Under the pieces are notes generated by a model that was not told where the DNA came from, did no database searches, and worked only from the letters and a program-made list of their open reading frames with translations. 64,000 nt of DNA from Macrostomum lignano (Eukaryota): positions 56,461-120,460 of the forward strand of contig NIVC01002724.1 in NCBI GenBank assembly GCA_002269645.1, in the 5' to 3' direction. Shown piece by piece: positions 17,775 to 38,606 of the stretch (the stretch's first letter is position 1; each line of letters starts with the position of its first letter). A program made the position numbers and the translations under genes.

Positions 17775-20700
17775 CAGAGAGGGGAGGGTAAGAGGGGAGG
17801 GCAGAGGGTAAGATAGGAGAGGGTAAGAGGCAGGGCAGAGGTTAAGATAAGGGAGGGTAAGAGGGTAGACAGAGGGTGAGATAAGGGAGGGTAAGAGGCG
17901 GGGCAGAGATTGAGATAAGGGAGGGTAAGATGCGGGGCAGAGGGTGAGATAAGGGAGGGTAAGAGGCAGGGCAGAGGTTGAGATAAGGGAGGGTTAGAGG
18001 TGAGGGCAGAGGTTGAGATAAGGGAGGGTTAGAGGCAGGGCAGAGGTTGAGATAAGGGAGGGTTAGAGGTGAGGGCAGAGGTTGAGATAATTGATGGTTA
18101 GAGGGGAGGGCAGAGGGTGAGATAAGGGAGGTTTAGAGGCAGGGCAGAGGTTGAGATAAGGGATGGTTAGAGGGTAGACAGAGGTTGAGATAAGGGAGGG
18201 TTAGAGGGGAGGGCAGAGGGTGAGATAAGTGAGGGTTAGAGGGTAGATAGAGGTTGAGATAAGGGAGGGTTAGAGGGGAGGGCAGAGGGTGAGATAAGGG
18301 AGGTTTAGAGGCAGGGCAGAGGTTGAGATAAGGGATGGTTAGAGGGTAGACAGAGGTTGAGATAAGGGAGGGTTAGAGGGGAGGGCAGAGGGTGAGATAA
18401 GTAAGGGTTAGAGGGTAGACAGAGGTTGAGATAAGGGAGGGTTAGAGGGGAGGGCAGAGGGTGAGATAAGGGATGGTTAGAGGGTAGACAGAGGTTGAGA
18501 TAAGGGAGGGTTAGAGGGGAGGGCAGAGGGTGAGATAAGTGAGGGTTAGAGGGTAGACAGAGGTTGAGATAAGGGAGGGTTAGAGGGGAGGGCAGAGGGT
18601 GAGATAAGGGAGGGTTAGAGGTGAGGGCAGAGGTTGAGAAAAGGGAGGGTTAGAGGCAGGGCAGAGGTTGAGATAAGAGAGGGTTAGAGGCAGGGCAGAG
18701 GTTGAGATAATTGATGGTTAGAGGGGAGGGCAGAGGGTGAGATAAGGGAGGTTTAGAGGCTGGGCAGAGGTTGAGATAAGGGATGGTTAGAGGTGAGGGC
18801 AGAGGTTGAGATAAGGGAGGGTTAGAGGGGAGGGCAGAGGGTGAGATAAGTGAGGGTTAGAGGGTAGATAGAGGTTGAGATAAGGGAGGGTTAGAGGGGA
18901 GGGCAGAGGGTGAGATAAGTGAGGGTTAGAGGGTAGACTGAGGTTGAGATAAGGGAGGGTTAGAGGGGAGGGCAGAGGGTGAGATAAGGGAGGGTAAGAG
19001 GCAGGGCAGAGGTTGAGATAAGGGAGGGTTAGAGGTGAGGGCAGAGGTTGAGATAAGGGAGGGTTAGAGGCAGGGCAGAGGTTGAGATAAGGGAGGGTTA
19101 GAGGGGAGGGCAGAGGTTTAGATAATTGATGGTTAGAGGGGAGGGCAGAGGGTGAGATAAGGGAGGTTTAGAGGCAGGGCAGAGGTTGAGATAAGGGATG
19201 GTTAGAGGGTAGACAGAGGTTGAGATAAGGGAGGGTTAGAGGGGAGGGCAGAGGGTGAGATAAGTGAGGGTTAGAGGGTAGACAGAGGTTGAGATAAGGG
19301 AGGGTTAGAGGGAGGGCAGAGGGTGAGATAAGGGATGGTTAGAGGGTAGACAGAGGTTGAGATAAGGGAGGGTTAGAGGGGAGGGCAGAGGGTGAGATAA
19401 GTGAGGGTTAGAGGGTAGACAGAGGTTGAGATAAGGGAGGGTTAGAGGGGAGGGCAGAGGGTGAGATAAGTGAGGGTTAGAGGGTAGACAGAGGTTGAGA
19501 TAAGGGAGGGTTAGAGGGGAGGGCAGAGGGTGAGATAAGGGAGGGTTAGAGGTGAGGGCAGAGGTTGAGATAAGGGAGGGTTAGAGGCAGGGCAGAGGTT
19601 GAGATAAGGGAGGGTTAGAGGGGAGGGCAGAGGTTGAGATAATTGATGGTTAGAGGGGAGGGCAGAGGGTGAGATAAGGGAGGTTTAGAGGCTGGGCAGA
19701 GGTTGAGATAAGGGATGGTTAGAGGGTAGACAGAGGTTGAGATAAGGGAGGGTTAGAGGGGAGGGCAGAGGGTGAGATAAGTGAGGGTTAGAGGGTAGAC
19801 AGAGGTTGAGATAAGGGAGGGTTAGAGGGGAGGGCAGAGGGTGAGATAAGGGATGGTTAGAGGGTAGACAGAGGTTGAGATAAGGGAGGGTTAGAGGGGA
19901 GGGCAGAGGGTGAGATAAGTGAGGGTTAGAGGGTAGACAGAGGTTGAGATAAGGGAGGGTTAGAGGGGAGGGCAGAGGGTGAGATAAGGGATGGTTAGAT
20001 GGGAGGGCAGAGGGTGAGATAAGGGAGGGTACGAGGCAGGGCAGAGGGTGAGATAAGGGATGGTTAGATGGGAGGGCAGAGGGTGAGATAAGGGAGGGTA
20101 CGAGGCAGGGCAGAGGGTGAGATAAGGGAGGGTAAGAGGCAGGGCAGAGGGTGAGATAAGGGAGGGTAAGCAGGGCAGAGGGTGAGATAAGGGAGGGTAA
20201 GCAGGGCAGAGGGTGAGATAAGGGAGGGTAAGCAGGGCAGAGGGTGAGATAAGTGAGGGTTAGAGGGTAGACAGAGGTTGAGATAAGGGAGGGTAAGAGG
20301 CAGGGCAGAGGGTGAGATAAGGGATGGTTAGATGGGAGGGCAGAGGGTGAGATAAGGGAGGGTACGAGGCAGGGCAGAGGGTGAGATAAGGGAGGGTAAG
20401 AGGCAGGGCAGAGGGTGAGATAAGGGAGGGTAAGCAGGGCAGAGGGTGAGATAAGGGAGGGTAAGCAGGGCAGAGGGTGAGATAAGGGAGGGTAAGCAGG
20501 GCAGAGGGTGAGATAAGGGAGGGTAAGAGGCAGGGCAGAGGGTGAGATAAGGGAGGGTAAGCAGGGCAGAGGGTGAGATAAGGGAGGGTAAGAGGCAGGG
20601 CAGAGGGTGAGATAAGGGAGGGTAAGCAGGGCAGAGGGTGAGATAAGTGAGGGTTAGAGGGTAGACAGAGGTTGAGATAAGGGAGGGTAAGAGGCAGGGC

Positions 20701-20970
20701 AGAGGGTGAGATAAGGGAGGGTACGAGGCAGGGCAGAGGGTGAGATAAGGGAGGGTAAGAGGCAGGGCAGAGGGTGAGATAAGGGAGGGTAAGCAGGGCA
20801 GAGGGTGAGATAAGGGAGGGTAAGCAGGGCAGAGGGTGAGATAAGGGAGGGTAAGAGGCAGGGCAGAGGGTGAGATAAGGGAGGGTAAGCAGGGCAGAGG
20901 GTGAGATAAGGGAGGGTAAGAGGCAGGGCAGAGGGTGAGATAAGGGAGGGTAAGCAGGGCAGAGGGTGAA
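17775..20970. repeat. 31-35-bp purine-rich minisatellite (GAGATAAGGGAGGGTTAGAGGGGAGGGCAGAGGGT)
   Basis: About 95 copies in two variant zones (TTAG-type, then TAAG-type from about 20030). Confidence 0.96.
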
Positions 20971-21242
20971 ATCGAAGACATAAAAAGACAAAATCTACAC
21001 AACCAATACAAAAAATTCTGCATGGAAACAAAAAGAAAAATTTAAAGTAAAAGACCTACAGAGATTGCCTCACTCTGCTAAATTCACTGCTTTACTTCAC
21101 TATTGAATATCGTCAAGTTCAATTTCCGGAGGTAAGCTAAGAGTGTTTGCTTTCGCGCCCAAAAATATTGCGGCGGGGAGAAGCAAAGTAAAGCCTGGGG
21201 GCCAGGACCCCCCGAAAGCTTATTGTAACTTCATTGATAAAC

Positions 21243-22780: not shown

Positions 22781-25402
22781 CTACAGGTGATCGAAGTTAT
22801 CAATTCTTTGAGCTTCAACCAGACGAATCATTGGAACAACAGCAGCCTGCTCAGCAGATTTATACTTCAACTGAGCATCATCTTTCGCTGGCAGACTATT
22901 GGCACTGCTAATACTCAGATTAGCAAAGCACGCTAAGCCGAAGTTCTCAGAGCCCAAACCGGCGAAACCGGTGCTTGGCGTGCTGCCAGGCAGCGTCTCC
23001 AAGTTCGCGACAGTTTGGTTTCCAATCTTTGCCGTGTACTTGCCGCTCTGCCATTGGTTGGGGCGCGATTGTGGGTTAATTGGGTCTTAGACTTTAGCCC
23101 CCCCAGCACCCCTGATGCTTCAGTGAGTTGTCACTGCCCCCCCCCCCCTGATGCTTCAGTGAGTTCTCACCGCCCCCCTTGATGCTTCAGTGAGTTGTCA
23201 CTGCCCCCCCCCGGATGCTTCAGTGAGTTGTCACTGATCCCCCCCTGATGCTTCAGTGAGTTGTCACTGCCCCCCCCTGATGCTTCAGTGAGTTGTCACT
23301 GACCCCCCCCTGATGCTTCAGTGAGTTCTCACCGCCCACCCCTGATGCTTCAGTGAGTTGTCACTGCCCCCCCCGGATGCTTCAGTGAGTTGTCACTGCC
23401 CCCTGATGCTTCAGTGAGTTGTCACTGACCCCCCCCCAATGCTTCAGCGAGTTGTCACTGCCCCCTGATGCTTCAGTGAGTTGTCACTGCCCCTCCCCCC
23501 TGATGCTTCAGTGAGTTGTCACTGCCCCCCCTGATGCTTCAGTGAGTTGTCACTCCCTCAGCTCCCCCTGATGCTGCAGTGAGTTGTCACTGCCCCCCCC
23601 CCTGCTGCTTCAGTGAGTTGTCACTGCCCCCCCCCCCTGCTGCTTCAGTGAGTTGTCACTGCCCCCTGATGCTTCAGCGAGTTGTCACTGCCCCCTGATG
23701 CTTCAGTGAGTTGTCACTGCCCCCTCCCCCCCTGATGCTTCAGTGAGTTGTCACTCCCTCAGCTCCCCCTGATGCTGCAGTGAGTTGTCACTGCCCCCCA
23801 CCCCTGCTGCTTCAGTGAGTTGTCACTGCCCCCCCCCTGCTGCTTCAATGAGTTGTCACTGACCCCCCCTGATGCTTCAGTGAGTTGTCACTGCCCCCCC
23901 CTGATGCTTCAGTGAGTTGTCACTGCCCCCCTGATGCTTCAGTGAGTTGTCACTCCCTCAGCCCCCCCCCTGATGCTTCAGTGAGTTGTCACTCCCTCAG
24001 CCCCCCCCTGATGCTTCAGTGAGTTGTCACTCCCTCAGCCCCCCTGATGCTTCAGTGAGTTGTCACTCCCTCAGCACCCCCTTATGCTTCAGTGAGTTGT
24101 CACTGCCCCCCTGATGCTTCAGTGAGTTGTCACTCCCTCAGCACCCCCCTGATGCTTCAGTGAGTTGTCACTCCCTCAGCCCCCCCCCTGATGCTTCAGT
24201 GAGTTGTCACTCCCTCAGCCCCCCTGATGCTTCAGTGAGTTGTCACTCCCTCAGCACCCCCTTATGCTTCAGTGAGTTGTCACTGCCCCCCCCTGATGCT
24301 TCAGTGAGTTGTCACTCCCTCAGCCCCCCCTGATGCTTCAGTGAGTTGTCACTCCCTCAGCACCCCCTGATGCTTCAGTGAGTTGTCACTCCCTCAGCCC
24401 CCCCCCCCTAATGCTTCAGTGAGTTGTCACTCCCTCAGCCCCCCCCCTGATGCTTCAGTGAGTTGTCACTCCCTCAGCACCCCCTTATGCTTCAGTGAGT
24501 TGTCACTGCCCCCCTGATGCTTCAGTCAGTTGTCACTCCCTCAGCACCCCCTTATGCTTCAGTGAGTTGTCACTGCCCCCCTGATGCTTCAGTGAGTTGT
24601 CACTCCCTCAGCACCCCCTTATGCTTCAGTGAGTTGTCACTGCCCCCCTGATGCTTCAGTGAGTTGTCACTCCCTCAGCACCCCCTTATGCTTCAGTGAG
24701 TTGTCACTGCCCCCCCCCTGATGCTTCAGTGAGTTGTCACTCCCTCAGCACCCCCCTGATGCTTCAGTGAGTTGTCACTCCCTCAGCACCCCCCTGATGC
24801 TTCAGTGAGTTGTCACTCCCTCAGCACCCCCCTGATGCTTCAGTGAGTTGTCACTCCCTCAGCCCCCCCTGATTCTTCAGTAAGCCAAATAACAATACTC
24901 ACCTGCAAATTCAGCGTCAACTTCACCCAGGCATCGTAGCCATAGACAAAACTGCCTCCTTTGATCTTCTTGGTTTGAGCTGTGAAAGCAGAGTAAGCCA
25001 GGTAAGTAGGTAAGTAAGTAAGTCAGGTTGGCCCTGACGGCTGTGAATCGCACATCTCCAAAAGCCCAAAATAAATTCGGCCGCGAATGTAGGCCGCTCA
25101 CCTAAGTCATTAGTAACGGCATACTGGTTGCTAGCCGGAAACAGCCACAGGAAGAGGCCTTTGGCTTGGAAAGCACCGCAGCCGCCTTGGTCAATGCGGG
25201 CAGCAACAAAAATTCCTGTGGTGGAATTCACAGAGGGGACCAGCACGGAGGCGGACACGGAGATGTCAGACCTGCGGGTTGCGTTTGTAATCTGTTTCAA
25301 TTGCTGTTGCTGGGGCAAACGGCAGCAATGATTGGCTGAGCTCTGCTTTTTAGTAAGACACGTAGTTGGGAATAACACATTAATAGATACTTATTACAAA
25401 TG

Positions 25403-25478
<76 letters not shown>

Positions 25479-25691
25479 CACAGACAGACAGACAGACAGG
25501 CAGACAGACAGACACACACACAGACAGACAGACAGACAGACACACAGACAGACAGACAGACACACACACACACAGACAGACACACAGACAGACAGACAGA
25601 CAGACACACACACAGACAGACAGACAGACAGACACACAGACAGACAGACAGACACACACACAGACAGACAGACACACAGACAGACAGACAC

Positions 25692-25726
<35 letters not shown>

Positions 25727-25727
25727 C

Positions 25728-25766
<39 letters not shown>

Positions 25767-25767
25767 C

Positions 25768-25798
<31 letters not shown>

Positions 25799-26035
25799 CA
25801 CAGACAGACAGACAGACACACAGACAGACAGACAGACACACAGACAGACAGACACACAGACAGACACACAGACAGACAGACAGACAGACAGACACACAGA
25901 CAGACAGACACACAGACAGACAGACAGACACACAGACAGACAGACAGACACACAGACAGACAGACACACAGACAGACAGACAGACACACAGACAGACAGA
26001 CAGACACACAGACAGACAGACACAGACAGACAGAC

Positions 26036-26082
<47 letters not shown>

Positions 26083-26123
26083 CACAGACAGACAGACAGA
26101 CACACAGACAGACAGACAGACAC

Positions 26124-26170
<47 letters not shown>

Positions 26171-29100
26171 CACAGACACACAAACAAGCAACAGGAACAG
26201 ACTCCACCAGATAATCAATAAATTAAGAGCACAACAAATTAGCCAATAGCAAGTAGCAGCACACAGACCAGTTGCCCATAACAGTGTAAGGGCTGGTCAG
26301 TCTCAGTGGGCACCAGTTCAATGTGGCCAGTGTGACCACCTGGCAGAGGGCCTGCGGCTGGGCGGACACTTCAGATGCGCCGCCACTCAACTTGACAGCT
26401 TCAAAGAAGCCGGCCTGAGGAGTGAGAAAGCTGGGCGACTGGCCCACACTGAGGTCTAAAAACATAATTTTTTATTTCTTTTTAGAGTTCTTTTATTCTT
26501 TAAATTTTAACTTTTATAATTTTTACGAGTAGCAGATAAACAAAAAATGTGTCTATTGTTTTTAAGACTTTGCTTTGACCAACAAATTGGTTTCGAGTAC
26601 AATGCTCACGGTAATTAGATGGCAACTGGTCTGTGTGCTCAATTAAACAAAATAAATATAAATTAACACCATGTAAATTAAAATGCGTTAGTATGTGTTT
26701 ACTACTTGATTAGTCAAGTTAAATCACTAGAAAATATTATTAGCAACGTTTAGCAATGAAGATTACTAAAACAACTTCATTATTTTTATTGATACATAGG
26801 TTTTTATCTACTTAGACTGTCTTATAAATCTGTCACTGATTCTTATCTACCTGCCCTGTAATTACGAGCTATATATCTGATATCTGATATAATTTTCTAT
26901 CTACCTGGTATCTACCTGCCCTGTAATTATCTACGTGTTATCTACTTGCCCTGTAATTATCTACGTGTTACCTACTTGCCCTGTAATTATCTACGTGTTA
27001 TCTACCTGGTATCTACCTGTCCTGTAATTATCTACGTGTTATCTACCTGGTATCTACCTGCCCTGTAATTATCTACGTGTTATCTACCTGGTATCTACCT
27101 GCCCTGTAATTATCTACGTGTTATCTACCTGGTATCTACCTGCCCTGTAATTATCTACCTGATATCCATCTGCCCTGTAACTATCTATCTATATCTGCCC
27201 TGTAACTATCTATCTATATCTGCCCTGTAACTATCTATCTATATCTGCCCTGTAACTATCTATCTAGATCTGCCCTGTAATTATCTATCTACCTGCCCTG
27301 TAATTAATGATGCCGATCTACCGAGTCTCGGGTTGTATAGGAAAGCAAATAGCAAATTTCTACTACTCCGAATAAAAAATCTCACCAATTATAATTGCCA
27401 ATAACGGCAATTGGTTGAGACTGTTTGCACCAGTCCACAGGCTGCTGCAACACAGTCTGCATTAAGCATTGCTTATTAACGTTATAATGATCGATAATGC
27501 TACGCCCGTTACCGACAGTGGGCGGAGAGTCGACTATCTCAAAACTGCCAACCTGTGGCACCAGATTAAGCGGATTTGAGCCGGGCTGATAGTCTGAGAG
27601 GCGAGAATATCATGGATATATATATATATATGTATTGCATCATTTGATAAAATACACTCACCCTACTAACAGTAGTGAAAAATCAAATCAAGGCATTGCA
27701 AAAATTCACGACGCCACAAAACCAGAATGTTTCAAAATTTGACTTCTCGGTGTATTCAAGTTTAAATTTGTAGGTCAAAGCATAGCCTTAAGTAAGTTGA
27801 ATTAAGTTACATTAATTTATGTTGAAACTGTTACAGTCATGGGATAGGGATTCTGCAACTATGGGACTGGGATTCTGTAGTTATGGGATTGGGATTCTGC
27901 AGTCATGGGATTGGGATTCTGCAACTATGGGATTGGGATTCTGTAGTCATGGGATTGGGATTCTGCAGTTATGGGATTGGGATTCTGCAGTCATGGGATT
28001 AGGATTCTGCAGTTATGGGATTGGGATTCTGCAGTTATGGGATTAGGATTCTTCAGTTATGGGATTGGGATTCTGCAGTTATGGGATTAGGATTCTTCAG
28101 TTATGGGATTGGGATTCTGCAGTTATGGGATTAGGATTCTGCAGTCATGGGATTGGGATTCTGCAGTTATGGGATTAGGATTCTGCAGTCATGGGATTGG
28201 GATTCTGCAGTTATGGGATTAGGATTCTTCAGTTATGGGATTGGGATTCTGCAGTTATGGGATTAGGATTCTGCAGTCATGGGATTGGGATTCTGCAGTC
28301 ATGGGATTGGGATTCTGCAGTTATGGGATTGGGATTCTGCAGTTATGGGATAGGGATTCTGCAGTTATGGGATTAGGATTCTGCAGTTATGGGATTAGGA
28401 TTCTTCAGTTATGGGATTGGGATACTGCAGTTATGGGATTAGGATTCTGCAGTCATGGGATTGGGATTCTGCAGTTATGGGATTAGGATTCTGCAGTCAT
28501 GGGATTGGGATTCTGCAGTTATGGGATTGGGATTCTGCAGTTATGGGATTGGGATTCTGCAGTTATGGGATTAGGATTCTTCAGTTATGGGATTGGGATT
28601 CTGCAGTTATGGGATTAGGATTCTGCAGTCATGGGATTGGGATTCTGCAGTTATGGGATTAGGATTCTGCAGTCATGGGATTGGGATTCTGCAGTTATGG
28701 GATTAGGATTCTGCAGTCATGGGACTGGGATTCTGCAGTCATGGGATTGGGATTCTGCAGTCATGGGACTGGGATTCTGCAGTTATGGGATTGGGATTCT
28801 GCAGTTATGGGATTGGGATTCTGCAGTCATGGGACTGGGATTCTGCAGTTATGGGATTGGGATTCTGCAGTCATGGGACTGGGATTCTGCAGTTATGGGA
28901 TTGGGATTCTGCAGTTATGGGATTAGGATTCTGCAGTCATGGGACTGGGATTCTGCAGTCATGGGACTGGGATTCTGCAGTTATGGGATTGGGATTCTGC
29001 AGTTATGGGATTAGGATTCTGCAGTCATGGGACTGGGATTCTGCAGTTATGGGATTAGGATTCTGCAGTTATGGGATTGGGATTCTGCAGTCATGGGATT

Positions 29101-32100
29101 GGGATTCTGCAGTCATGGGACTGGGATTCTGCAGTTATGGGATTAGGATTCTTCAGTTATGGGATTGGGATTCTGCAGTTATGGGATTAGGATTCTGCAG
29201 TCATGGGACTGGGATTCTGCAGTCATGGGACTGGGATTCTGCAGTTATGGGATTAGGATTCTGGAACTATGGGATTGGGATTCTGCAGTTATGGGATTAG
29301 GATTCTGCAGTCATGGGATTGGGATTCTGCAGTCATGGGATTGGGATTCTGCAGTCATGGGATTGGGATTCTGCAGTCATGGGATTGGGATTCTGCAGTT
29401 ATGGGATTAGGATTCTGCAGTCATGGGATTGGGATTCTGCAGTCATGGGATTGGGATTCTGCAGTCATGGGATTGGGATTCTGCAGTCATGGGATTGGGA
29501 TTCTGCAGTCATGGGATTGGGATTCTGCAGTTATGGGATTAGGATTCTGCAGTTATGGGATTAGGATTCTTCAGTTATGGGATTGGGATTCTGCAGTTAT
29601 GGGATTAGGATTCTGCAGTCATGGGATTGGGATTCTGCAGTCATGGGATTGGGATTCTGCAGTTATGGGATTGGGATTCTGCAGTTATGGGATAGGGATT
29701 CTGCAGTTATGGGATTAGGATTCTGCAGTTATGGGATTAGGATTCTTCAGTTATGGGATTGGGATTCTGCAGTTATGGGATTAGGATTCTGCAGTCATGG
29801 GATTGGGATTCTGCAGTTATGGGATTAGGATTCTGCAGTCATGGGATTGGGATTCTGCAGTTATGGGATTGGGATTCTGCAGTAATGGGATTGGGATTCT
29901 GCAGTTATGGGATTAGGATTCTGCAGTCATGGGACTGGGATTCTGCAGTTATGGGATTAGGATTCTGGAACTATGGGATTGGGATTCTGCAGTTATGGGA
30001 TTGGGATTCTGCAGTCATGGGACTGGGATTCTGCAGTTATGGGATTAGGATTCTGGAACTATGGGATAGGGATTCTGCAGTTATGGGATTGGGATTCTGC
30101 AGTTATGGGATTAGGATTCTGCAGTCATGGGACTGGGATTCTGCAGTTATGGGATTAGGATTCTGCAGTTATGGGATTGGGATTCTGCAGTCATGGGATT
30201 GGGATTCTGCAGTCATGGGACTGGGATTCTGCAGTTATGGGATTAGGATTCTTCAGTTATGGGATTGGGATTCTGCAGTTATGGGATTAGGATTCTGCAG
30301 TCATGGGACTGGGATTCTGCAGTCATGGGACTGGGATTCTGCAGTTATGGGATTAGGATTCTGGAACTATGAGATTGGGATTCTGCAGTTATGGGATTAG
30401 GATTCTGCAGTCATGGGATTGGGATTCTGCAGTCATGGGATTGGGATTCTGCAGTCATGGGATTGGGATTCTGCAGTCATGGGATTGGGATTCTGCAGTT
30501 ATGGGATTGGGATTCTGCAGTTATGGGATTGGGATTCTGCAGTTATGGGATAGGGATTCTGCAGTCATGGGATTGGGATTCTGCAGTTATGGGATTGGGA
30601 TTCTGCAGTTATGGGATTAGGATTCTGCAGTCATGGGATTGGGATTCTGCAGTCATGGGATTGGGATTCTGCAGTCATGGGATTGGGATTCTGCAGTCAT
30701 GGGACTGGGATTCTGCAGTCATGGGACTGGGATTCTGCAGTTATGGGATTAGGATTCTGGAACTATGAGATTGGGATTCTGCAGTTATGGGATTAGGATT
30801 CTGCAGTCATGGGATTGGGATTCTGCAGTCATGGGATTGGGATTCTGCAGTCATGGGATTGGGATTCTGCAGTCATGGGATTGGGATTCTGCAGTTATGG
30901 GATTGGGATTCTGCAGTTATGGGATTGGGATTCTGCAGTTATGGGATTAGGATTCTGCAGTCATGGGACTGGGATTCTGAAGTCATGGGACTGGGATTCT
31001 GCAGTTATGGGATTAGGATTCTGGAACTATGGGATTGGGATTCTGCAGTTATGGGATTAGGATTCTGCAGTCATGGGATTGGGATTCTGCAGTCATGGGA
31101 TTGGGATTCTGCAGTCATGGGATTGGGATTCTGCAGTCATGGGATTGGGATTCTGCAGTTATGGGATTGGGATTCTGCAGTTATGGGATTAGGATTCTTC
31201 AGTTATGGGATTGGGATTCTGCAGTTATGGGATTAGGATTCTGCAGTCATGGGATTGGGATTCTGCAGTCATGGGATTGGGATTCTGAAGTTATGGGATT
31301 GGGATTCTGCAGTTATGGGATAGGGATTCTGCAGTTATGGGATTAGGATTCTGCAGTTATGGGATTAGGATTCTTCAGTTATGGGATTGGGATTCTGCAG
31401 TTATGGGATTAGGATTCTGCAGTCATGGGATTGGGATTCTGCAGTTATGGGATTAGGATTCTGCAGTCATGGGATTGGGATTCTGCAGTTATGGGATTGG
31501 GATTCTGCAGTTATGGGATTGGGATTCTGCAGTTATGGGATTAGGATTCTTCAGTTATGGGATTGGGATTCTGCAGTTATGGGATTAGGATTCTGCAGTC
31601 ATGGGATTGGGATTCTGCAGTTATGGGATTAGGATTCTGCAGTCATGGGATTGGGATTCTGCAGTTATGGGATTAGGATTCTGCAGTCATGGGACTGGGA
31701 TTCTGCAGTCATGGGATTGGGATTCTGCAGTCATGGGACTGGGATTCTGCAGTTATGGGATTGGGATTCTGCAGTTATGGGATTGGGATTCTGCAGTCAT
31801 GGGACTGGGATTCTGCAGTTATGGGATTGGGATTCTGCAGTCATGGGACTGGGATTCTGCAGTTATGGGATTGGGATTCTGCAGTTATGGGATTAGGATT
31901 CTGCAGTCATGGGACTGGATTCTGCAGTCATGGGACTGGGATTCTGCAGTTATGGGATTGGGATTCTGCAGTTATGGGATTAGGATTCTGCAGTCATGGG
32001 ACTGGGATTCTGCAGTTATGGGATTAGGATTCTGCAGTTATGGGATTGGGATTCTGCAGTCATGGGATTGGGATTCTGCAGTTATGGGATTAGGATTCTT

Positions 32101-35100
32101 CAGTTATGGGATTGGGATTCTGCAGTTATGGGATTAGGATTCTGCAGTCATGGGACTGGGATTCTGCAGTCATGGGACTGGGATTCTGCAGTTATGGGAT
32201 TAGGATTCTGGAACTATGGGATTGGGATTCTGCAGTTATGGGATTAGGATTCTGCAGTCATGGGATTGGGATTCTGCAGCCATGGGATTGGGATTCTGCA
32301 GTCATGGGATTGGGATTCTGCAGTTATGGGATTGGGATTCTGCAGTTATGGGATTAGGATTCTGCAGTTATGGGATTAGGATTCTGCAGTTATGGGATTG
32401 GGATTCTGCAGTTATGGGATAGGGATTCTGCAGTCATGGGATTGGGATTCTGCAGTTATGGGATTGGGATTCTGCAGTTATGGGATTAGGATTCTGCAGT
32501 CATGGGATTGGGATTCTGCAGTCATGGGATTGGGATTCTGCAGTTATGGGATAGGGATTCTGCAGTCATGGGATTGGGATTCTGCAGTCATGGGATTGGG
32601 ATTCTGCAGTTATGGGATTGGGATTCTGCAGTTATGGGATTAGGATTCTGCAGTCATGGGACTGGGATTCTGCAGTCATGGGACTGGGATTCTGCAGTTA
32701 TGGGATTAGGATTCTGGAACTATGGGATTGGGATTCTGCAGTTATGGGATTAGGATTCTGCAGTCATGGGATTGGGATTCTGCAGTCATGGGATTGGGAT
32801 TCTGCAGTCATGGGATTGGGATTCTGCAGTCATGGGATTGGGATTCTGCAGTTATGGGATTGGGATTCTGCAGTTATGGGATTAGGATTCTGCAGTCATG
32901 GGACTGGGATTCTGCAGTCATGGGACTGGGATTCTGCAGTTATGGGATTAGGATTCTGGAACTATGGGATTGGGATTCTGCAGTTATGGGATTGGGATTC
33001 TGCAGTTATGGGATTAGGATTCTGCAGTCATGGGATTGGGATTCTGCAGTCATGGGATTGGGATTCTGCAGTTATGGGATTAGGATTCTGCAGTCATGGG
33101 ACTGGGATTCTGCAGTCATGGGACTGGGATTCTGCAGTTATGGGATTAGGATTCTGGAACTATGGGATTGGGATTCTGCAGTTATGGGATTAGGATTCTG
33201 CAGTTATGGGATTGGGATTCTGCAGTTATGGGATAGGGATTCTGCAGTCATGGGATTGGGATTCTGCAGTTATGGGATTGGGATTCGGCAGTTATGGGAT
33301 TAGGATTCTGCAGTCATGGGATTGGGATTCTGCAGTCATGGGATTGGGATTCTGCAGTCATGGGATTGGGATTCTGCAGTCATGGGATTGGGATTCTGCA
33401 GTTATGGGATTGGGATTCTGCAGTTATGGGATTAGGATTCTGCAGTCATGGGACTGGGATTCTGCAGTCATGGGACTGGGATTCTGCAGTTATGGGATTA
33501 GGATTCTGGAACTATGGGATTGGGATTCTGCAGTTATGGGATTAGGATTCTGAAACTATGGGATTAGGATTCTTCAGTTATGGGATTGGGATTCTGCAGT
33601 TATGGGATTGGGATTCTGCAGTTATGGGATCGGGAGTCTGCAACTATGGGATTAGGATTCTGGAACTATGGGATTGGGATTCTGCAGTTATGGGATTAGG
33701 ATTCTGCAACTATGGGATTAGGATTCTGAAACTATGGGATTAGGATTCTGCAACTATGGGATTGGGATTCAGCAGTTATGGGATTAGGATTCTGCAACTA
33801 TGGGATTAGGATTCTGCAACTATGAGATTGGGATTCTGCAGTTATGGGAGCAAGCTCTTAGGAGACATGACGCTTAATATATTATGTAACAAGCATTAAG
33901 GTAAATTAAAAAAAGATTTTATATTGTCAAAAACAGATTGACTTGAATATTATCTTACTCTGAAAATTGTCGCTATAAGGCAGAGGAAAGGGCTTCGATG
34001 GCGGAGGCTGAGAACGCTGGCCTTTAGTTGCCGTAGCAACTGTCGATAGAGTTACGACAACGTCAACATCGAGGAACAGAGTCAGTTGTCCAGATTTTAC
34101 CTGAATTTGAGATTAATTTGTTCTAATTACTGCTCGGGAGGGGTAGAGGTTGCCTGGTTAATGTACGTTGGGGCTGATTGGCTCGGGAGGGGTAGAAGTT
34201 GGCTGGTGGATGCACATTGGGGCTGATTGGCTCGGGAGGGGTAGAAGTTGGCTGGTGGATGTACATTGGGGCTGATTGGCTCGGGAGGGGTAGAAGTTGG
34301 CTAGCGGATGTACACTGGCTCTGATTGGCTCGGGAGGGGCAGAAGTAGGCTATCGGATGTACATTAGGGCTGATTGCTTTGATCTTTTGATAATAAAATC
34401 AAACTACTTTTCTCACCTGCAACGGACTCTGTTTAACAAAATAACTCGACGAAACGCCTTTCTTATAGCTAAGAACGGACTTCCAATAATAAAGCTGAGT
34501 GATAGAAGCAAATGCGCCAGCCAGTTTGATGGTGACATTCTGCGGCTTCACAGTGTAAGGCGGCAGTGACGGCCTAATGCACTCGGAATGATCGTGACTC
34601 TGTGGGAAAATGAAATAGCAGTAATTATTATTGACTTGTTCTTTAATAAAGAGATAAATTTGCAAACTACTCTACTTAAATAGTCTTATAAGTACGGTAT
34701 CCCAAATATTTATGATCATTTTATGCTCAATAAAATTTTAAAGGGCAGGGTGTAGTACGAAAAAAATCTACATTGTTTCGCTTTTCAAATTTTAGATTAT
34801 CTTACAAGCAAACATAAACCTTAGAAATTTAGTCTTTTTGGATTAACGCTAAAAATCTTATAAAAATGTTTCAACTACACTACTGAATGACGCAAGTAGT
34901 GTACGTAACATTTTATTGCTCAAACTAGAAGTTGTAGCCTAGTGGTTAAAGCGTCGAACTCACGACTGAAAGGTCGGGGTTCGATTTCTCGACCTTACTC
35001 GGAACAATTTGTGTCCCTGAGCAAGCAGCTGTAAAATTGGTGCCAGCATTAGCTGGGCTAGGGTGTGTGTGGCGACCCCCCCCCCAGTCCTTGGACTGAA

Positions 35101-38100
35101 CAGCCGTACGCAGCTTTCAGATGCGCCGCGCAATAGCCGCAGCCTGAGCTGTCGGAACTTGCACAACTGCCCATTAGGACGGGTTTATTAAAAATTCTCG
35201 AAAGCTAAAAATTCAATTAAAATTACTAAAAAATAACGTTTTTAGCCTCACCATAGTCTCAAATATAATCGTCAACTGTTTAGTATTAGAATCGGTCAGT
35301 CCAACATAGCTGCCCCCGCTAGGCAGCCTGCCAGAACCGCCGCCAGCCGGTAGATAATACCAGCCCGGCAAAGCAAACTGACTAGTGTGGGCTGTCATCC
35401 AAAGCGGCCCAGTGACCTCGTAGTGACCCGACCAAGGCTCATTAGCGGTCATTAGCGAGCAGCGTGGGAATGGCAAATTATCATAATAAGCCGCCACAAG
35501 ATTCCAAGCAATGCTACTAGTCATGCCGCCATCAACAAAATTTCTATTAAGAATTCTGGCCCAGCAGCCGCTGCCGATGTCGTCATTGAATGTGCTGAAG
35601 TCTTCAGAGGCCCACAGCGGCTTGCCAGTACGTTTAGCTTCATTAGAGGACAAAGTACCCGGGTAGTGAGCGCCAAGTGCGAAGGTGGCAGCGGCGAACT
35701 GGGGATCATTAAGTACATCGTGCGCCGGTCCCCAATCGCCGTCGCCAACAACCAAACGGATGTTTTTAAAGCCGGCGTGATCTAAAACTGCCCTGAGCAG
35801 TCGGACGTACTCAACATCGTAGGCGCGCTCGTTCCAGATCTGTTAGTGAAAAATACAGAAATGTAACTATAGATCAGATTAAAATCTCCATTCGCAGATC
35901 CCCAGTAAATCAGATTGAAATCCCATTCACAGATCCCCAATAAATCAGATTGAAATCCCATTCACAGATCCCAATAAATCAGATTGAAATCCCAATTCAC
36001 AGATCCCCAATAAATCAGATTGAAAATCTCCATTCGCAGATCCCCAGTAAATCAGATTGAAATCCCATTCACAGATCCCAATAAATCAGATTGAAATCCC
36101 AATTCACAGATCCCCAATAAATCAGATTATAATCCCCATTCACAGATCCCCAATAAATCAGATTAAAATCCCAATTCACAGATCCCCAATCAATCAGATT
36201 GAAATCCCATTCACAAACCCTCAATAAATCAGATTGATATCCCTATTCACAGATCCCCAATCAATCAGACTGAAATCCCATTCACAGATCTTCAGGATAT
36301 ATTAACATTAAAACAAGGTTAAAGATAATATAAAAAATAAAACTTACACCAAGATAGTCTATGGTAAGGTTGTGATAATCCTTGGCTCCCTGAACCCATT
36401 TGAGCACGTACTTGGCGGTGAGGCTGGGATAATTGTAGGGACTTGAAGTGCCATTGCCAACCCAGCCAGGGAAGGCCCATGGCAGCCCATACAGCGTGAT
36501 GTTGGGATTTCGCTGTAAAAAGGTAGAGAAAATACAACAAAATGTAAGTTTTTTCATCCAAAAGTCAATTCTTGGTTACCTGAATTGGATTCATTAGTTA
36601 CCCAAATGGGATTCTTGGTTACCTGAATGGGATTCATTAGATACCCAAATGGGATTCTTGGTTACCTGAATGGGATTCATAAGTTACCCAAATGGGATTC
36701 TTGGTTACCTGAATTGGATTCATTAGTTACCCAAATGGGATTCTTGGTTACCTGAATTGGATTCATAAGTTACCCAAATGGGATTCTTTAGTTACCTGAA
36801 TTGGATTCTTAGTTTACTTGAGATTCTTAATTAATTAGGGTTCTTAAAAAATTAATTTAGCTAACTTACTTTTTTGGCTTCCTTCATCAGCCACCATTCA
36901 TATCCTCGATTATAGTTCAAATCCCAGCTATGATGCATGTGTGATGCCTCTGTGCCCTCAGTACTCTGCGAGTCGCCACCTATCTCAACTTTCAACATGT
37001 GCAATGAGGCACCAAAGTTGGGCTATAAAATGAAAAAATGTAGTAATATACAATTTACTTACTGAAAGTAGAAAAAACGAAGTTAATAATATAATTAATT
37101 TTTTAAAATCATGTTTTTTTATTTTTGATTGCTTACCAAGAAGAGGTAATCCAAAATTTGATCTCGCTGATTTTGTGGATAGTTTTGCAACAGTTTGGAT
37201 GTTGCCTAGAAACAAAAAATGGAATACCAATATGAATAGATAAATAATGCATACAAGTCTCTATGTAATTACATTAATATAACATTCAATACTATTTTCT
37301 GCATATTTATTCTATATATATCATAAAATAAAACAACATTTATCTCTATACATTATTAACTATTAAAAACTAGCTTTAGCAAACATATAGATAGAATTAA
37401 ATAGTAAATAAATAATTAAATAAAAATTAATAAATATTAATAATAATAAAATATTAATAAAAATTAATAAATATATAAATATATTAAATAAATATAAACA
37501 ATTAAATACATAATTAAATAATAAATTAAATAATTAAGTTAGACAACAATTAATTTTATTTCTTCTTTAAAAAAAGCATATAAATAAATATTTTATTAGA
37601 ATGATATAATTTTTTTATTTTAACATAAACTTATATTTTCTAAATTTAATTTCAATGCAAAAGTTTAGTATCAATGACAAATCTAATTAATAAATTAATT
37701 ATTAAATGTTAAATAATGTTAATGTTAAATAATTTCACTATTCATGCATCTATATATAAATAATATAACATGAACATGATGCCATAGTCTGGAAGGTGGC
37801 CTTTACACTGGAATTTTCTGGTGTATTTTTGCTCTCGCTGACAATCTTAGCATACACTTGGCATATAGAATTTTCAGGTTCAACATGAAGTGTACATAGT
37901 CGGCATACAAAAAATAGCCATGTTCAAGGCTAATGTAATTGTGTAGTGAAATATCAACCAACATAAAAGGGTCTTTAAAAATAATTGGAAACTAAAATAG
38001 AAAATATGAACACAATCACAAGAAAATCAAAATTAAAACAAAGAATATCAGTTTTTCGCAAAAACAGCTGTTTTAAAGTTAGTAAAAGTTTTGAGTTCCT

Positions 38101-38606
38101 AAAAATATATATTCATTAAAAAATGGCGTATAAACAATTTTAGTTTCAGAGTAAAATTTTTATTTTATTTTATGTCAGCATAAAATTGAAAAAAAACATG
38201 AATTTTCATTCTGGCGTAAAGCTGCCATGATCCGGACTATGGACATGATGTAACTTGGGAAGTTGAGTGATTAGATTGTAGTAAAGTATTTGGGCTTGTG
38301 TGTGGCCTATGCAATGGTTGTATAATGGGTACAGTGCTCTGTGCTAAAAATTAGCAATACAATTGAATAAATTAAATACTAAAAAATATAACAATATAGC
38401 CTTCCCTTCACCCTCCAGGTACAAATAAAGAAAAAACTTACACCTCCTCCACTGATGGCTCCAATGCCATAAAACATCGAGGCAGCATTTTTGATAACTG
38501 ATTCATCACTGATGCGAATCTTAGAGTTGAACTTGTTTTCAAAACTCAGATGGATACTGTGACCAGAAGCGAAAAATAGCGCCAAAAATATTACGGCTGA
38601 CTTCAT
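22781..38606 (-). CDS. GALC: Galactocerebrosidase (glycoside hydrolase family 59), spliced gene
   Basis: Phase-consistent GT-AG exons: 38606-38442 (signal peptide...GIGAISGGG), 37205-37137 ([10 protein letters not shown]...DYLFL), 37022-36870 ([17 protein letters not shown]...[13 protein letters not shown]), 36512-36348 ([17 protein letters not shown]), 35839-35252 (IWNER...SEDFST...GCWARILN...EPWSGHY...FETM), 34599-34417, 34100-33959, alternative 27593-27386 or 26455-26269, 25271-25102, 24979-24903, about 23047-22781 (acceptor weak). Catalytic WNE and SED motifs intact. Confidence 0.95.
23100..24880. repeat. Hairpin-containing minisatellite (TGATGCTTCAGTGAGTTGTCACT plus variable poly-C spacer) in the last GALC intron
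   Basis: About 50 units of about 29-42 bp. Confidence 0.95.
25402..26182. repeat. (CAGA)n/(CA)n compound microsatellite
   Basis: Direct inspection; explains the QTDR/CLSV ORFs. Confidence 0.98.
26269..26455 (-). CDS. GALC: GALC alternative exon 8B (paralogue of 8A)
   Basis: tttag|AC ... TG|gtctgt, 187 nt, open: [20 protein letters not shown]...[28 protein letters not shown]. Confidence 0.8.
26845..27305. repeat. Degenerate tandem repeat (TATCTACCTGCCCTGTAAT-based) between GALC exons 8A and 8B
   Basis: About 15 imperfect units. Confidence 0.85.
27386..27593 (-). CDS. GALC: GALC alternative exon 8A
   Basis: cag|AC ... TG|gtgag, 208 nt, open: [20 protein letters not shown]...[28 protein letters not shown]. 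Confidence 0.85.
27830..33848. repeat. 22-bp satellite (ATGGGATTGGGATTCTGCAGTT), about 6 kb, filling GALC intron 7
   Basis: About 270 copies; explains all MGLGFCS ORFs. Confidence 0.98.
34132..34380. repeat. 49-bp tandem repeat (GCTCGGGAGGGGTAGAAGTTGGCTGGTGGATGTACATTGGGGCTGATTG)
   Basis: About 5 copies; starts at 34132, 34181, 34230. Confidence 0.9.
34931..35160 (+). mobile_element. tRNA-derived SINE-like element (possible CORE-like body)
   Basis: A box TAGCCTAGTGG at 34935 and B box GGTTCGATTTC at 34978, followed by TGTGTCCCTGAGCAAG...TGTAAAATTGG; no complete cloverleaf. Confidence 0.55.
35870..36292. repeat. 34-36-bp tandem repeat (AAATCAGATTGAAATCCCATTCACAGATCCCCAAT) in GALC intron 4
   Basis: About 12 copies. 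Confidence 0.92.
36572..36815. repeat. 42-43-bp dimeric tandem repeat (GGATTCATTAGTTACCCAAATGGGATTCTTGGTTACCTGAAT) in GALC intron 3
   Basis: About 5.5 copies built from two related ~21-bp halves. Confidence 0.9.
37782..38242. mobile_element. MITE with 8-bp TSD in GALC intron 1
   Basis: TIR CCATAGTCTGGA / TCCGGACTATGG (one mismatch, further subterminal similarity); TSD ACATGATG at 37774-37781 and 38243-38250. Confidence 0.8.

What the first reader, a model, noticed from the sequence alone, without database searches (positions are those of the whole stretch)
26269..27593. Tandemly duplicated, mutually exclusive exon pair in galactocerebrosidase
Exons 8A (27593-27386) and 8B (26455-26269) are homologous ([14 protein letters not shown] / [14 protein letters not shown]; [13 protein letters not shown] / [13 protein letters not shown]; AVIGNYNW / TVMGNW). 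Both are stop-free, both enter in phase 1 and leave in phase 2, and both lengths are 1 mod 3, so including both or neither shifts the frame. They encode the start of the GALC lectin domain and are highly diverged yet intact, implying two retained isoforms. I know of no such arrangement in vertebrate GALC.
Basis: partly seen in the sequence, partly recalled or inferred. Interest (0 to 1): 0.8.

Follow-up and report, generated by a model that had tools for sequence, protein, structure and literature searches.

The report
Alternative exon pair in flatworm galactocerebrosidase
A flatworm gene for the lysosomal enzyme galactocerebrosidase carries two diverged copies of one exon. Only one copy is spliced into each mRNA, which gives two enzyme forms that differ around a tryptophan lining the substrate pocket, and molluscs and a brachiopod have the same switch.

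Summary
The window holds the Macrostomum lignano GALC gene (minus strand, 12 exon slots). My isoform-A model is identical to GenBank PAA55656.1.

- **The two exons:** 8A (27593-27386, 208 nt) and 8B (26455-26269, 187 nt) are homologous (alignment z = 9.2 against shuffles). Both have GT-AG sites, enter in phase 1 and leave in phase 2. Including both or neither shifts the frame into stop codons.
- **Both are used:** the RNA-based M. lignano annotation has 7-8A-9 models (Mlig000813g1/g2) and a clean 7-8B-9 model (Mlig005578g1). A transcript contig from an unnamed relative joins exon 7 directly to an 8B-type exon.
- **8B is under purifying selection:** pN 0.22 against pS 0.55 at near-saturated divergence. 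All three differences from one paralogous copy are synonymous.
- **The pair is not flatworm-specific:** Haliotis and Crassostrea genomes have the same layout, with the A-type exon upstream, the B-type downstream, and both 1 mod 3 in Haliotis. Lingula has both forms as RefSeq isoforms. Saccoglossus, Owenia and Tubulanus have a single exon.
- **What the exon encodes:** the start of the lectin domain, including the equivalent of mouse Trp524, a substrate-pocket residue. The loop after it is polar in A and more hydrophobic in B in 8 of 8 species pairs.

This is a real, old, undescribed example of a known kind of splicing. The functional difference between the isoforms is inferred, not shown.

The parts
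22781..38606 (-). Whole GALC (GH59) gene, start codon to stop codon, with 12 exon slots
   Evidence: Gene model built. The isoform-A translation (728 aa) is identical to GenBank PAA55656.1 / P0121. Pfam finds GH59, GH59M and the GH59_C lectin domain.
38442..38606 (-). Exon 1 (ATG at 38606, signal-peptide-like N-terminus)
37137..37205 (-). Exon 2
36870..37022 (-). Exon 3
36348..36512 (-). Exon 4
35252..35839 (-). Exon 5. It holds both catalytic Glu equivalents: WNE (mouse E182) and ASED (mouse E258).
34417..34599 (-). Exon 6
33959..34100 (-). Exon 7 (constitutive). It ends ...NFQ plus one base, so the next exon is entered in phase 1. Donor AGA|gtaaga.
27386..27593 (-). Exon 8A (208 nt), the upstream alternative. 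It encodes residues 489-558 of isoform A, has a polar loop after the pocket Trp (W543, ...[10 protein letters not shown]...), and a strong donor gtgaga.
   Evidence: Used in P0001/P0121. Predicted as four beta-strands; the region is at about pLDDT 80-93 outside a low-confidence stretch at about 511-530 that contains the lineage-specific insert (516-525 below 50).
26269..26455 (-). Exon 8B (187 nt), the downstream alternative. It encodes residues 489-551 of isoform B, has a more hydrophobic loop after the pocket Trp (W536, ...[12 protein letters not shown]...), a weak donor gtctgt, and 60% GC.
   Evidence: Used in P0123. Conserved in L001. Predicted as four beta-strands at pLDDT 81-96, apart from one loop block at 65.
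25102..25271 (-). Exon 9 (constitutive). Its first base G completes the Trp codon begun by either exon 8. It contains the GGC cysteine.
24903..24979 (-). Exon 10
22781..23047 (-). Exon 11, including the stop codon
27834..33849 (.). 22-bp minisatellite (about 273 copies) that fills most of intron 7-8A
   Evidence: The intron is 6365 nt here but 1419 and 889 nt in the paralogous copies.
26898..27303 (.). GATA/GGTAGATA-rich minisatellites in intron 8A-8B, complementary (with G-U pairs) to the repeat downstream of 8B
25403..26186 (.). (GACA)197 microsatellite, which reads (UGUC)n in the pre-mRNA, in intron 8B-9

Best explanation
Exons 8A and 8B are a genuine pair of mutually exclusive exons made by an old tandem exon duplication in the galactocerebrosidase gene of Macrostomum lignano.

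Each mRNA takes exactly one of them. The result is two full-length enzymes (728 and 721 aa) with the same catalytic TIM barrel and beta-sandwich. They differ in the first 60-70 residues of the C-terminal lectin domain: four beta-strands plus the loop that carries the tryptophan equivalent to mouse Trp524 (human Trp540), which lines the substrate pocket.

Exclusivity is enforced at least by the reading frame. Both exons are 1 mod 3, so including both or skipping both gives premature stops, and such transcripts would be unproductive (nonsense-mediated decay is inferred). The choice between the two is probably regulated, because 8B has a weak donor (gtctgt) while every other donor is gtaag or gtgag.

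The functional reading is inferred, not shown. The A form keeps the ancestral polar loop beside the pocket tryptophan, and the B form presents a more hydrophobic, proline-initiated loop. The two isoforms would then differ in how the pocket rim meets the lipid part of the substrate, or the saposin-type activator that sits over the active site.

The pair most likely predates the split of flatworms, brachiopods and molluscs and was lost in some lineages.
For: **Shown: the pair is real and frame-exclusive**
- Exact coordinates, splice sites, phases and frame consequences.
- Homology of the two exons, z = 9.2.
- The isoform-A model equals GenBank PAA55656.1.

**Shown: both exons are used**
- P0123 (BOX15_Mlig005578g1) is a clean exon 6-7-8B-9-10-11 product. 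Its locus also keeps 8A intact.
- That annotation was built from RNA-seq and transcript assemblies: StringTie, TACO, a de novo transcriptome and TransDecoder (PMC5730564).
- A spliced transcript contig from an unnamed relative (Logan SRR30276804) joins exon 7 directly to an 8B-type exon.

**Shown: 8B is under constraint**
- Between that relative and the window, 8B has pN 0.218 against pS 0.554 and a 24-nt in-frame indel. Synonymous sites in exons 1-7 are near saturation (pS 0.78).
- Against paralog L003, all three 8B differences are synonymous. Against P0123 the only 8B amino-acid change is V to I.

**Shown: both forms look like complete GALC**
- Both isoforms keep all three Pfam domains and align end to end with mouse GALC.
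- AlphaFold models predict the same four-strand pattern for both segments. The 8B model's best PDB match is mouse GALC, E = 5e-23.

**Shown: residue mapping**
- The chain index of 4ccc_A plus 14 gives mouse numbering; E182 and E258 check out.
- The RPITW tryptophan is therefore Trp524, which is human Trp540. That residue is listed among the substrate-pocket residues in PMC13187500. It aligns with W543 in 8A and W536 in 8B.
- The saposin A dimer covers the active site and touches all three domains (PMC5764952).

**Shown: the same architecture elsewhere**
- Haliotis cracherodii has an A-type exon at 18478-18652 (175 nt) and a B-type exon at 20857-21034 (178 nt), both entering in phase 1 and leaving in phase 2.
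- Crassostrea virginica has the A-type exon at about 9033-9215 and the B-type at about 10159-10338.
- Same-gene or same-genus isoform pairs exist in Lingula, Mytilus, Crassostrea, Pomacea, pectinids and unionids.
- The loop after the pocket Trp is more hydrophobic in B than in A in 8 of 8 pairs.
- In a neighbour-joining bootstrap, flatworm 8B groups with Lingula B in 92% of replicates. Flatworm A with flatworm B gets 3%.
Against: - No read-level junction counts were available. The relative usage of 8A and 8B, and the absence of transcripts with both or neither, are not shown.
- The three near-identical M. lignano copies were annotated from multi-mapping reads. Which copy makes which isoform is therefore unresolved.
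- The relative's transcript contig reads through the 8B donor into the intron. That contig shows the 7-8B junction but not 8B-9.
- Deep orthology is not secure. The exon is only about 60 residues. Mollusc A and B groups have low bootstrap support (7-19%), and an all-B clade gets 6%.
- In the four-way score comparisons between the flatworm and each mollusc, the within-species A-B sum is higher than the cross-species A-A plus B-B sum.
- Owenia, Tubulanus and Saccoglossus have only one exon. A single ancient origin therefore requires several losses.
- No enzymatic or structural data distinguish the two isoforms.
Confidence: 0.82

Rival explanations
1. Independent, convergent duplications. The flatworm pair arose within Platyhelminthes, and the mollusc and brachiopod pairs arose separately. 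The shared features (upstream polar exon, downstream WCP-hydrophobic exon) would then be convergent.
For: - A single exon at this position in an annelid, a nemertean and a hemichordate.
- Within-species A-B similarity in molluscs exceeds flatworm-mollusc A-A or B-B similarity.
- Mollusc A/B clades and an all-B clade have low bootstrap support.
Against: - Flatworm 8B groups with Lingula B in 92% of bootstrap replicates. Flatworm A+B and Lingula A+B get 3% and 5%.
- The order is the same, A upstream and B downstream, in the flatworm, a gastropod and a bivalve. The identical phases and 1-mod-3 lengths were checked in the flatworm and the gastropod only.
- The Pro right after Trp-Cys is shared by the B exons of seven of the eight species pairs (all but the oyster), and the 6-residue hydrophobic loop by all eight, across three phyla.
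Confidence: 0.3
2. Division of labour between gene copies instead of alternative splicing. In the polyploid M. lignano genome, some GALC copies would use only 8A and another only 8B.
For: The annotation gives 8A to Mlig000813g1/g2 and 8B to Mlig005578g1.
Against: - All three loci keep both exons intact with unchanged splice sites.
- The copies are 98-100% identical in their exons, and reads were multi-mapped. Assignment of an isoform to a copy is therefore arbitrary.
- The 8B-annotated copy has a 1-nt gap in exon 5 and a truncated model.
- In Lingula the two forms (X2, X3) and in Pomacea (X1, X2) are RefSeq isoforms of one species' gene.
Confidence: 0.08
3. Exon 8B is an unproductive or terminal exon. 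Its inclusion would mostly lead to retention of the downstream intron and a truncated protein without most of the lectin domain, so it would be a regulatory off-switch and not a second enzyme.
For: - Weak 8B donor gtctgt.
- The relative's transcript runs through the donor into the intron.
- Lingula isoform X3 is likewise truncated just after its A-type exon.
Against: - P0123 shows 8B spliced precisely to exon 9 with a complete lectin domain.
- Purifying selection acts along the whole of 8B, including the split Trp codon and the Cys.
- The model folds with high confidence.
Confidence: 0.05
4. Exon 8B is a decaying duplicate (a pseudo-exon) that happens to be open by chance.
For: It is more diverged from other GALC sequences than 8A: 110.9 against 125.3 bits to mouse GALC. 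It also has a weak donor.
Against: - It is transcribed and spliced.
- pN is well below pS at saturating divergence, and the indel is in frame.
- All changes against paralog L003 are synonymous.
- Conserved counterparts exist in other phyla.
Confidence: 0.02

Closest known systems
Mutually exclusive exon pairs that arose by tandem exon duplication and swap part of a binding domain, for example FGFR2 IIIb/IIIc and pairs in tropomyosin, SNAP25 and voltage-gated channels (recalled from general knowledge, not tested here)
   Same: Two adjacent homologous exons with the same phase, of which one is chosen per mRNA. The swapped segment is half of a beta-sandwich domain that contributes to ligand or substrate recognition, and the rest of the protein is constant.
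   Different: The host gene is a lysosomal glycosidase, for which I found no such report. The cluster has only two members. Exclusivity is explicable by reading frame alone. No steric, U12 or docking/selector mechanism was found.
Galactocerebrosidase-like isoforms X1/X2/X3 in RefSeq for molluscs (Haliotis, Mytilus, Crassostrea, Pomacea, pectinids and others) and Lingula anatina
   Same: The same exon position, with the same A-type (polar, often N-glycosylated loop) and B-type (WCP-hydrophobic loop) alternatives. The same order in the genome (Haliotis, Crassostrea), and the same phases in Haliotis.
   Different: The flatworm exons are much more diverged. 8A carries a 15-20-residue lineage-specific insert and lacks the mollusc NKS-type sequon. 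8B has lost two residues before the final Trp. These database isoforms are automatic predictions that, as far as I could find, nobody has described.
Vertebrate GALC (mouse structures 3ZR5, 4CCC, 5NXB; the human Krabbe disease enzyme)
   Same: The same three-domain architecture, catalytic Glu pair and pocket Trp524 equivalent. The intron positions flanking this exon are conserved at least to a hemichordate.
   Different: The shark and mouse sequences seen here have one A-like version of this segment and lack the Cys after the pocket Trp. No vertebrate genome was examined here. The absence of a second exon was shown only for Saccoglossus, Owenia and Tubulanus.

Membership tests
Mutually exclusive exons from tandem exon duplication | Neighbouring exons in one gene are homologous to each other | tested here: met
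   Alignment score 77 against -12 +/- 9.7 for shuffles, z = 9.2. 38% identity. Both align to the same segment of mouse GALC.
Mutually exclusive exons from tandem exon duplication | Same entry and exit phase, so that either exon fits between the same flanking exons | tested here: met
   Both enter in phase 1 and leave in phase 2. Both spliced products are open to the normal stop codon.
Mutually exclusive exons from tandem exon duplication | Each exon is found on its own in mature transcripts | tested here: met
   7-8A-9 in P0001/P0121 and 7-8B-9 in P0123, from an RNA-based annotation. The 7-8B junction also appears in an independent transcript contig.
Mutually exclusive exons from tandem exon duplication | Transcripts with both exons or neither are absent or unproductive | tested here: inconclusive
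   Both and neither give a frameshift with immediate stop codons, so such transcripts cannot encode GALC. Whether they are made, and whether they are degraded, could not be tested without reads.
MXE mechanism: steric hindrance (intron between the pair too short to splice) | Donor-to-branch-point distance below about 50-60 nt | tested here: not met
   Intron 8A-8B is 930 nt here and 1506 and 1410 nt in the paralogs.
MXE mechanism: U2/U12 spliceosome incompatibility | One intron has U12-type splice sites ([AG]TATCCTT donor) | tested here: not met
   The donors are gtaaga, gtgaga and gtctgt, and the acceptors are ordinary polypyrimidine-AG.
MXE mechanism: competing RNA structures (docking and selector sites) | A docking site that can pair alternatively with a selector next to each exon | tested here: inconclusive
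   A duplex scan of the 400-nt flanks found no specific docking/selector pair. The only strong signal is complementarity between low-complexity repeats on either side of 8B. There is no intron sequence from distant relatives to test conservation.
Glycoside hydrolase family 59 (galactocerebrosidase) | GH59 TIM-barrel domain with the catalytic acid/base and nucleophile glutamates | tested here: met
   PF02057 E = 3e-119. WNE and SED align with mouse E182 and E258.
Glycoside hydrolase family 59 (galactocerebrosidase) | Central beta-sandwich and C-terminal lectin domain | tested here: met
   PF17387 and PF21708 in both isoforms. The best PDB match of the 8B model is mouse GALC.
Glycoside hydrolase family 59 (galactocerebrosidase) | Beta-galactosylceramide hydrolase activity | not testable with these tools
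   Needs an enzyme assay.

The most novel reading that the evidence does not exclude
One gene has encoded two galactocerebrosidases since before flatworms, brachiopods and molluscs diverged. An ancient splice switch exchanges the lectin-domain loop next to the pocket tryptophan (mouse Trp524) between a polar form and a hydrophobic form. This gives the isoforms different lipid-substrate ranges or different dependence on a saposin-type activator. Deuterostomes, and at least some annelids and nemerteans, either lost the switch or never had it. If true, it would be a natural experiment on what the poorly understood GALC lectin domain does.
Probability: 0.3. Interest if true: 0.65.

Novelty: new member of a known kind. 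Interest (0 to 1): 0.5.

Why it matters
- **For GALC biology:** GALC is the enzyme deficient in Krabbe disease, and the role of its lectin domain is still described only as 'proposed' (PMC13187500). Here evolution has kept two versions of the part of that domain that reaches the substrate pocket, across several phyla. Comparing the two natural isoforms in activity, substrate range, activator dependence and tissue of expression is a direct and cheap way to ask what this segment contributes.
- **For splicing evolution:** it adds a deeply conserved two-exon mutually exclusive cluster in a housekeeping lysosomal enzyme, in a lineage (Spiralia) where such events are little studied.
- **For annotation:** the M. 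lignano annotations split or mis-join the isoforms: separate models on different gene copies, and a hybrid 8A/8B model in UniProt (A0A1I8GXE8). These could be corrected.

Tried and rejected
- **PDB search with each exon peptide alone.** It found no GALC hit, only chance DARPin matches for 8A. The exons are too short and diverged, and the mapping worked only with flanking exons included.
- **Genomic loci for Lingula X2 and Pomacea X1/X2.** They are not on record, because only the longest product of a gene is indexed. The genomic order of the Lingula pair is therefore unverified.
- **Profile search with a B-type exon alignment to map its taxonomic range.** It returned only 16 short, mostly unnamed fragments and was not informative.
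- **Structural papers by Deane 2011 and Hill 2013.** They are not held in the library. The pocket-residue list came from PMC13187500 instead, and I verified the numbering myself.
- **Structure prediction of my spliced full-length isoform B.** I used P0123, the C-terminal half with 8B, and P0001, full length with 8A, instead. Model coordinates are not returned, so distances from exon-8 residues to the active site could not be measured.
- **Unsupervised clustering of 118 exon-8 segments.** It did not give a clean A/B split for the flatworm. 8A falls with the mollusc B-type and single-exon sequences because it keeps ancestral features. I therefore do not claim that flatworm 8A is the strict orthologue of mollusc A.
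- **Docking/selector RNA pairing.** No specific pairing was found.
- **Literature searches for a described GALC mutually exclusive or tandem-duplicated exon.** None was found.
Full report
**What the window is**

The region 22781-38606 on the minus strand encodes a glycoside hydrolase family 59 galactocerebrosidase (GALC). I rebuilt the gene from open frames and splice sites. The exons are 1 (38606-38442), 2 (37205-37137), 3 (37022-36870), 4 (36512-36348), 5 (35839-35252), 6 (34599-34417), 7 (34100-33959), then 8A (27593-27386) or 8B (26455-26269), 9 (25271-25102), 10 (24979-24903) and 11 (23047-22781). The best database match is Macrostomum lignano, a free-living flatworm. With exon 8A the translation is identical, over all 728 residues, to GenBank PAA55656.1 (BOX15_Mlig000813g2). 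The exons and the three intron lengths around exon 8 are identical to contig NIVC01002724.1 of assembly Mlig_3_7.

**Checking the observation**

- Exon 8A is 208 nt, with acceptor ctctcag|AC and donor TTG|gtgaga.
- Exon 8B is 187 nt, with acceptor gtttttag|AC and donor CTG|gtctgt.
- Each exon is open in one frame only, and that frame gives the quoted peptides.
- Exons 1-7 total 1465 nt, so both alternatives are entered in phase 1. Both leave TG, which the first G of exon 9 completes to Trp.
- Splicing 7-8A-9 or 7-8B-9 gives an open frame to the normal stop codon (728 and 721 aa). Including both or neither runs straight into stop codons.
- The two peptides are 38% identical over aligned columns. 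Their global alignment score of 77 lies 9.2 standard deviations above 2000 shuffles, and none reached it. They are truly homologous.

**Are both exons used?**

Yes, as far as annotation-level evidence can show.

- The GenBank annotation of Mlig_3_7 contains two 8A models (Mlig000813g1 and g2).
- It also contains a third model, Mlig005578g1 (P0123, 342 aa). This reads exon 6-7-8B-9-10-11 with exact junctions (...SDNFQ|NLSVGQ...VMGNW|SDISVS...).
- According to the genome paper, these models derive from RNA-seq and transcript assemblies (STAR, StringTie, TACO, a de novo transcriptome and TransDecoder), not from ab initio prediction (PMC5730564).
- The locus behind P0123 (L006) contains both 8A and 8B intact. 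It also has a 1-nt gap in exon 5, which explains the truncated model.
- Independently, a 2001-nt spliced contig from a public sequencing run (Logan SRR30276804, organism not named, 74% protein identity) joins exon 7 directly to an 8B-type exon and skips any 8A. It then reads through the 8B donor (gtcagt) into intron sequence, so it documents the 7-8B junction only.

**Is 8B under selection?**

Between the window and that distant relative, synonymous sites in exons 1-7 are essentially saturated (pS 0.78, pN 0.11). Exon 8B has pN 0.218 against pS 0.554, which gives omega of about 0.26. Its pN is comparable to that of constitutive exon 6 (0.22). The only length difference is a 24-nt in-frame indel. 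Against paralog L003, the three nucleotide differences in 8B are all synonymous third-position changes, while 8A has one His-to-Asn change, and the splice sites are unchanged. The third copy differs in 8B by one conservative V-to-I change at the protein level. A decaying pseudo-exon is excluded.

**What the exon encodes**

- Both isoforms have the GH59 catalytic domain, the central domain and the C-terminal lectin domain. The lectin-domain model starts at profile position 2 inside exon 8B.
- Both C-terminal halves align end to end with mouse GALC, at 125 bits with 8A and 111 bits with 8B.
- I fixed the numbering by locating the catalytic glutamates. In chain 4ccc_A the WNE glutamate is index 168 and the SED glutamate is index 244, so index plus 14 gives mouse numbering (E182, E258).
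- The tryptophan of mouse RPITW is index 510, which is Trp524, equal to human Trp540. That residue is listed among those forming the active site and substrate pocket (PMC13187500).
- It aligns with W543 of isoform A (...QQPVDWC...) and W536 of isoform B (...ATLNWC...).
- A review from the group that solved the structure states that all three domains contribute to the active-site pocket (PMC5031207). The saposin A dimer sits over the active site and contacts all three domains (PMC5764952).
- AlphaFold models built with a 59-sequence alignment predict the same pattern of four beta-strands for both versions. With 8B the region is at pLDDT 81-96, apart from one loop block at 65. With 8A it is about 80-93 outside a low-confidence stretch at about 511-530 that holds the lineage-specific insert, of which 516-525 is below 50.
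- The best PDB match of the 8B-containing model is mouse GALC (E = 5e-23), followed by lectin and CBM folds.
- A cysteine directly after the pocket Trp, and a cysteine in the GGC motif of exon 9, are at least 90% conserved in the 59-60-sequence alignments, and both flatworm exons keep the former. A disulfide between the two is my inference.

**The pair is not confined to this flatworm**

Among the 120 best homologues, the segment falls into recognisable types. In Lingula (isoforms X2 and X3) and Pomacea (X1 and X2) both types occur as RefSeq isoforms of one species' gene. In Mytilus, Crassostrea, pectinids and unionids the two types were found in related species or unnamed contigs with matching flanks.

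Genomic loci confirm the architecture.

- In Haliotis cracherodii, an A-type exon (18478-18652, 175 nt) is followed 2.2 kb downstream by a B-type exon (20857-21034, 178 nt). Both are 1 mod 3 and both go from phase 1 to phase 2.
- In Crassostrea virginica, an A-type exon (about 9033-9215) precedes a B-type exon (about 10159-10338).
- This is the same order as in the flatworm.
- In 8 of 8 species pairs, the six residues after Trp-Cys are more hydrophobic in the B exon. Examples are PLRLTS, PFLQTF, PINLVF and IFNLVF in B against KQSQPI, GGGNNT, QAEKAN and DADQKN in A. Single-exon taxa and mouse are polar, like A.
- By contrast, the loci of the hemichordate Saccoglossus, the annelid Owenia and the nemertean Tubulanus have one exon at this position, with the same boundaries and no second copy in the flanking introns.

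**How old is the duplication?**

- Within molluscs, cross-species A-A plus B-B scores always exceed A-B plus B-A and also the within-species sums. The pair therefore predates the gastropod-bivalve split.
- For the flatworm the signal is weaker. A-A plus B-B is higher in 5 of 7 comparisons, lower in one and tied in one. In all six flatworm-mollusc comparisons the within-species sum is higher than A-A plus B-B; only against Lingula is it lower.
- In a neighbour-joining analysis, flatworm 8B groups with Lingula B in 92% of 500 bootstraps. Flatworm A with flatworm B (3%) and Lingula A with Lingula B (5%) are disfavoured. The mollusc groups and an all-B clade are unresolved.
- With about 60 columns, and with possible long-branch effects, I rate a single origin before the flatworm-brachiopod-mollusc divergence, with later losses, at about 0.6. 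Convergent duplication remains the main rival.

**How exclusivity is achieved**

- The intron between the pair is 930 nt (1506 and 1410 nt in the paralogs), which rules out steric hindrance.
- All donors and acceptors are ordinary U2-type sites, which rules out U2/U12 incompatibility.
- A duplex scan of the exon flanks found no specific docking/selector pairing.
- What the sequence does show is frame-based exclusivity: both exons or neither gives premature stops. Degradation of such transcripts by nonsense-mediated decay is inferred from general knowledge.
- Exon 8B has the only weak donor in the gene (gtctgt), and its read-through in the relative's contig fits a regulated exon.
- One oddity: 8B is bracketed by low-complexity repeats that are complementary to each other in the pre-mRNA. 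GAUA-rich minisatellites lie upstream and (UGUC)n lies downstream. The predicted duplex is -318 kcal/mol against -193 +/- 10 for mononucleotide shuffles. Both repeat types persist, at different lengths, in all three gene copies. Pairing across them would loop out 8B and favour 8A. That is speculation, the shuffle control is lenient for repeats, and this genome is full of such arrays.

**Comparison with what is known, and verdict**

Mechanistically this is a textbook two-member mutually exclusive exon cluster born of tandem exon duplication. It resembles cases where half of a beta-sandwich domain is swapped to change binding, such as FGFR2 IIIb/IIIc (from my own knowledge). It meets the defining features I could test: homology, equal phase and separate use. 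Absence of both/neither transcripts remains untested.

Full-text searches found no paper describing such an arrangement in GALC. It exists only implicitly, in automatic isoform predictions and in inconsistent M. lignano models, including a hybrid 8A/8B model in UniProt.

I therefore class it as a new member of a known kind. It is real, conserved and of moderate interest. The interest comes mainly from the swapped segment carrying a substrate-pocket residue of a disease-relevant enzyme whose lectin domain is poorly understood. The functional difference between the isoforms is inferred, not shown.

Noticed in passing
window 54900-61600: Pieces of a Maverick/Polinton-like mobile element. There is a protein-primed family-B DNA polymerase (59062-60603, PF03175, E = 1e-9), apparently continued in 60865-61557 with a YTDTDS motif. 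There is an rve integrase (56469-57506, PF00665, E = 3e-9). On the other strand there is an ORF with a parvovirus-type phospholipase A2-like domain (55974-56681, PF08398, E = 7e-14).
   Followed up: partly
window 25403-26186 and 26898-27303: Exon 8B is flanked by repeats that are complementary in the pre-mRNA: (UGUC)n downstream and GAUA/GGUAGAUA-rich minisatellites upstream. The predicted duplex is -318 kcal/mol against -193 +/- 10 for shuffles. Both repeat types are kept, with different lengths, in the two paralogous loci. Pairing might loop out 8B, or it may be a coincidence in a repeat-rich genome.
   Followed up: partly
window 27834-33849 and 23109-24881: Very large intronic minisatellites. 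About 273 copies of a 22-bp unit fill intron 7-8A, which is 6365 nt here but 1419 and 889 nt in the paralogs. A 37/67-bp array fills intron 10-11.
   Followed up: no
window 27386-27593 / 26269-26455 (UniProt A0A1I8GXE8, P0122): An older M. lignano gene model is a hybrid: the first 14 residues of 8A are joined to the rest of 8B. It uses an internal CAG|GT in 8A and an internal CAG| in 8B, at the homologous Pro-Gln codons. It could be an ab initio artefact or a real minor splice form.
   Followed up: no
L004 (Haliotis cracherodii) 14578-14688 and 15469-15600: A second tandemly duplicated exon in the abalone GALC-like gene, homologous to flatworm exon 6 (SHDHSLCIRPALPPYNV... and TFRHSFCIRPPILPYNV...). 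It may be another alternative pair or a decayed copy.
   Followed up: no
L006 (M. lignano NIVC01003356.1) 9417-10003: The third GALC copy has a 1-nt gap in exon 5 relative to the window. This is either an assembly error or a frameshift, and it explains why its annotated protein starts only at exon 6.
   Followed up: no
window 1-2000, minus strand: Exon-like open frames of another gene (for example ...LLCDISGVLYDPDGSGGRLIEGSIEAVKR, 1730-1999). They resemble a HAD-type phosphatase by eye, but Pfam gave no hit at E <= 0.01.
   Followed up: partly
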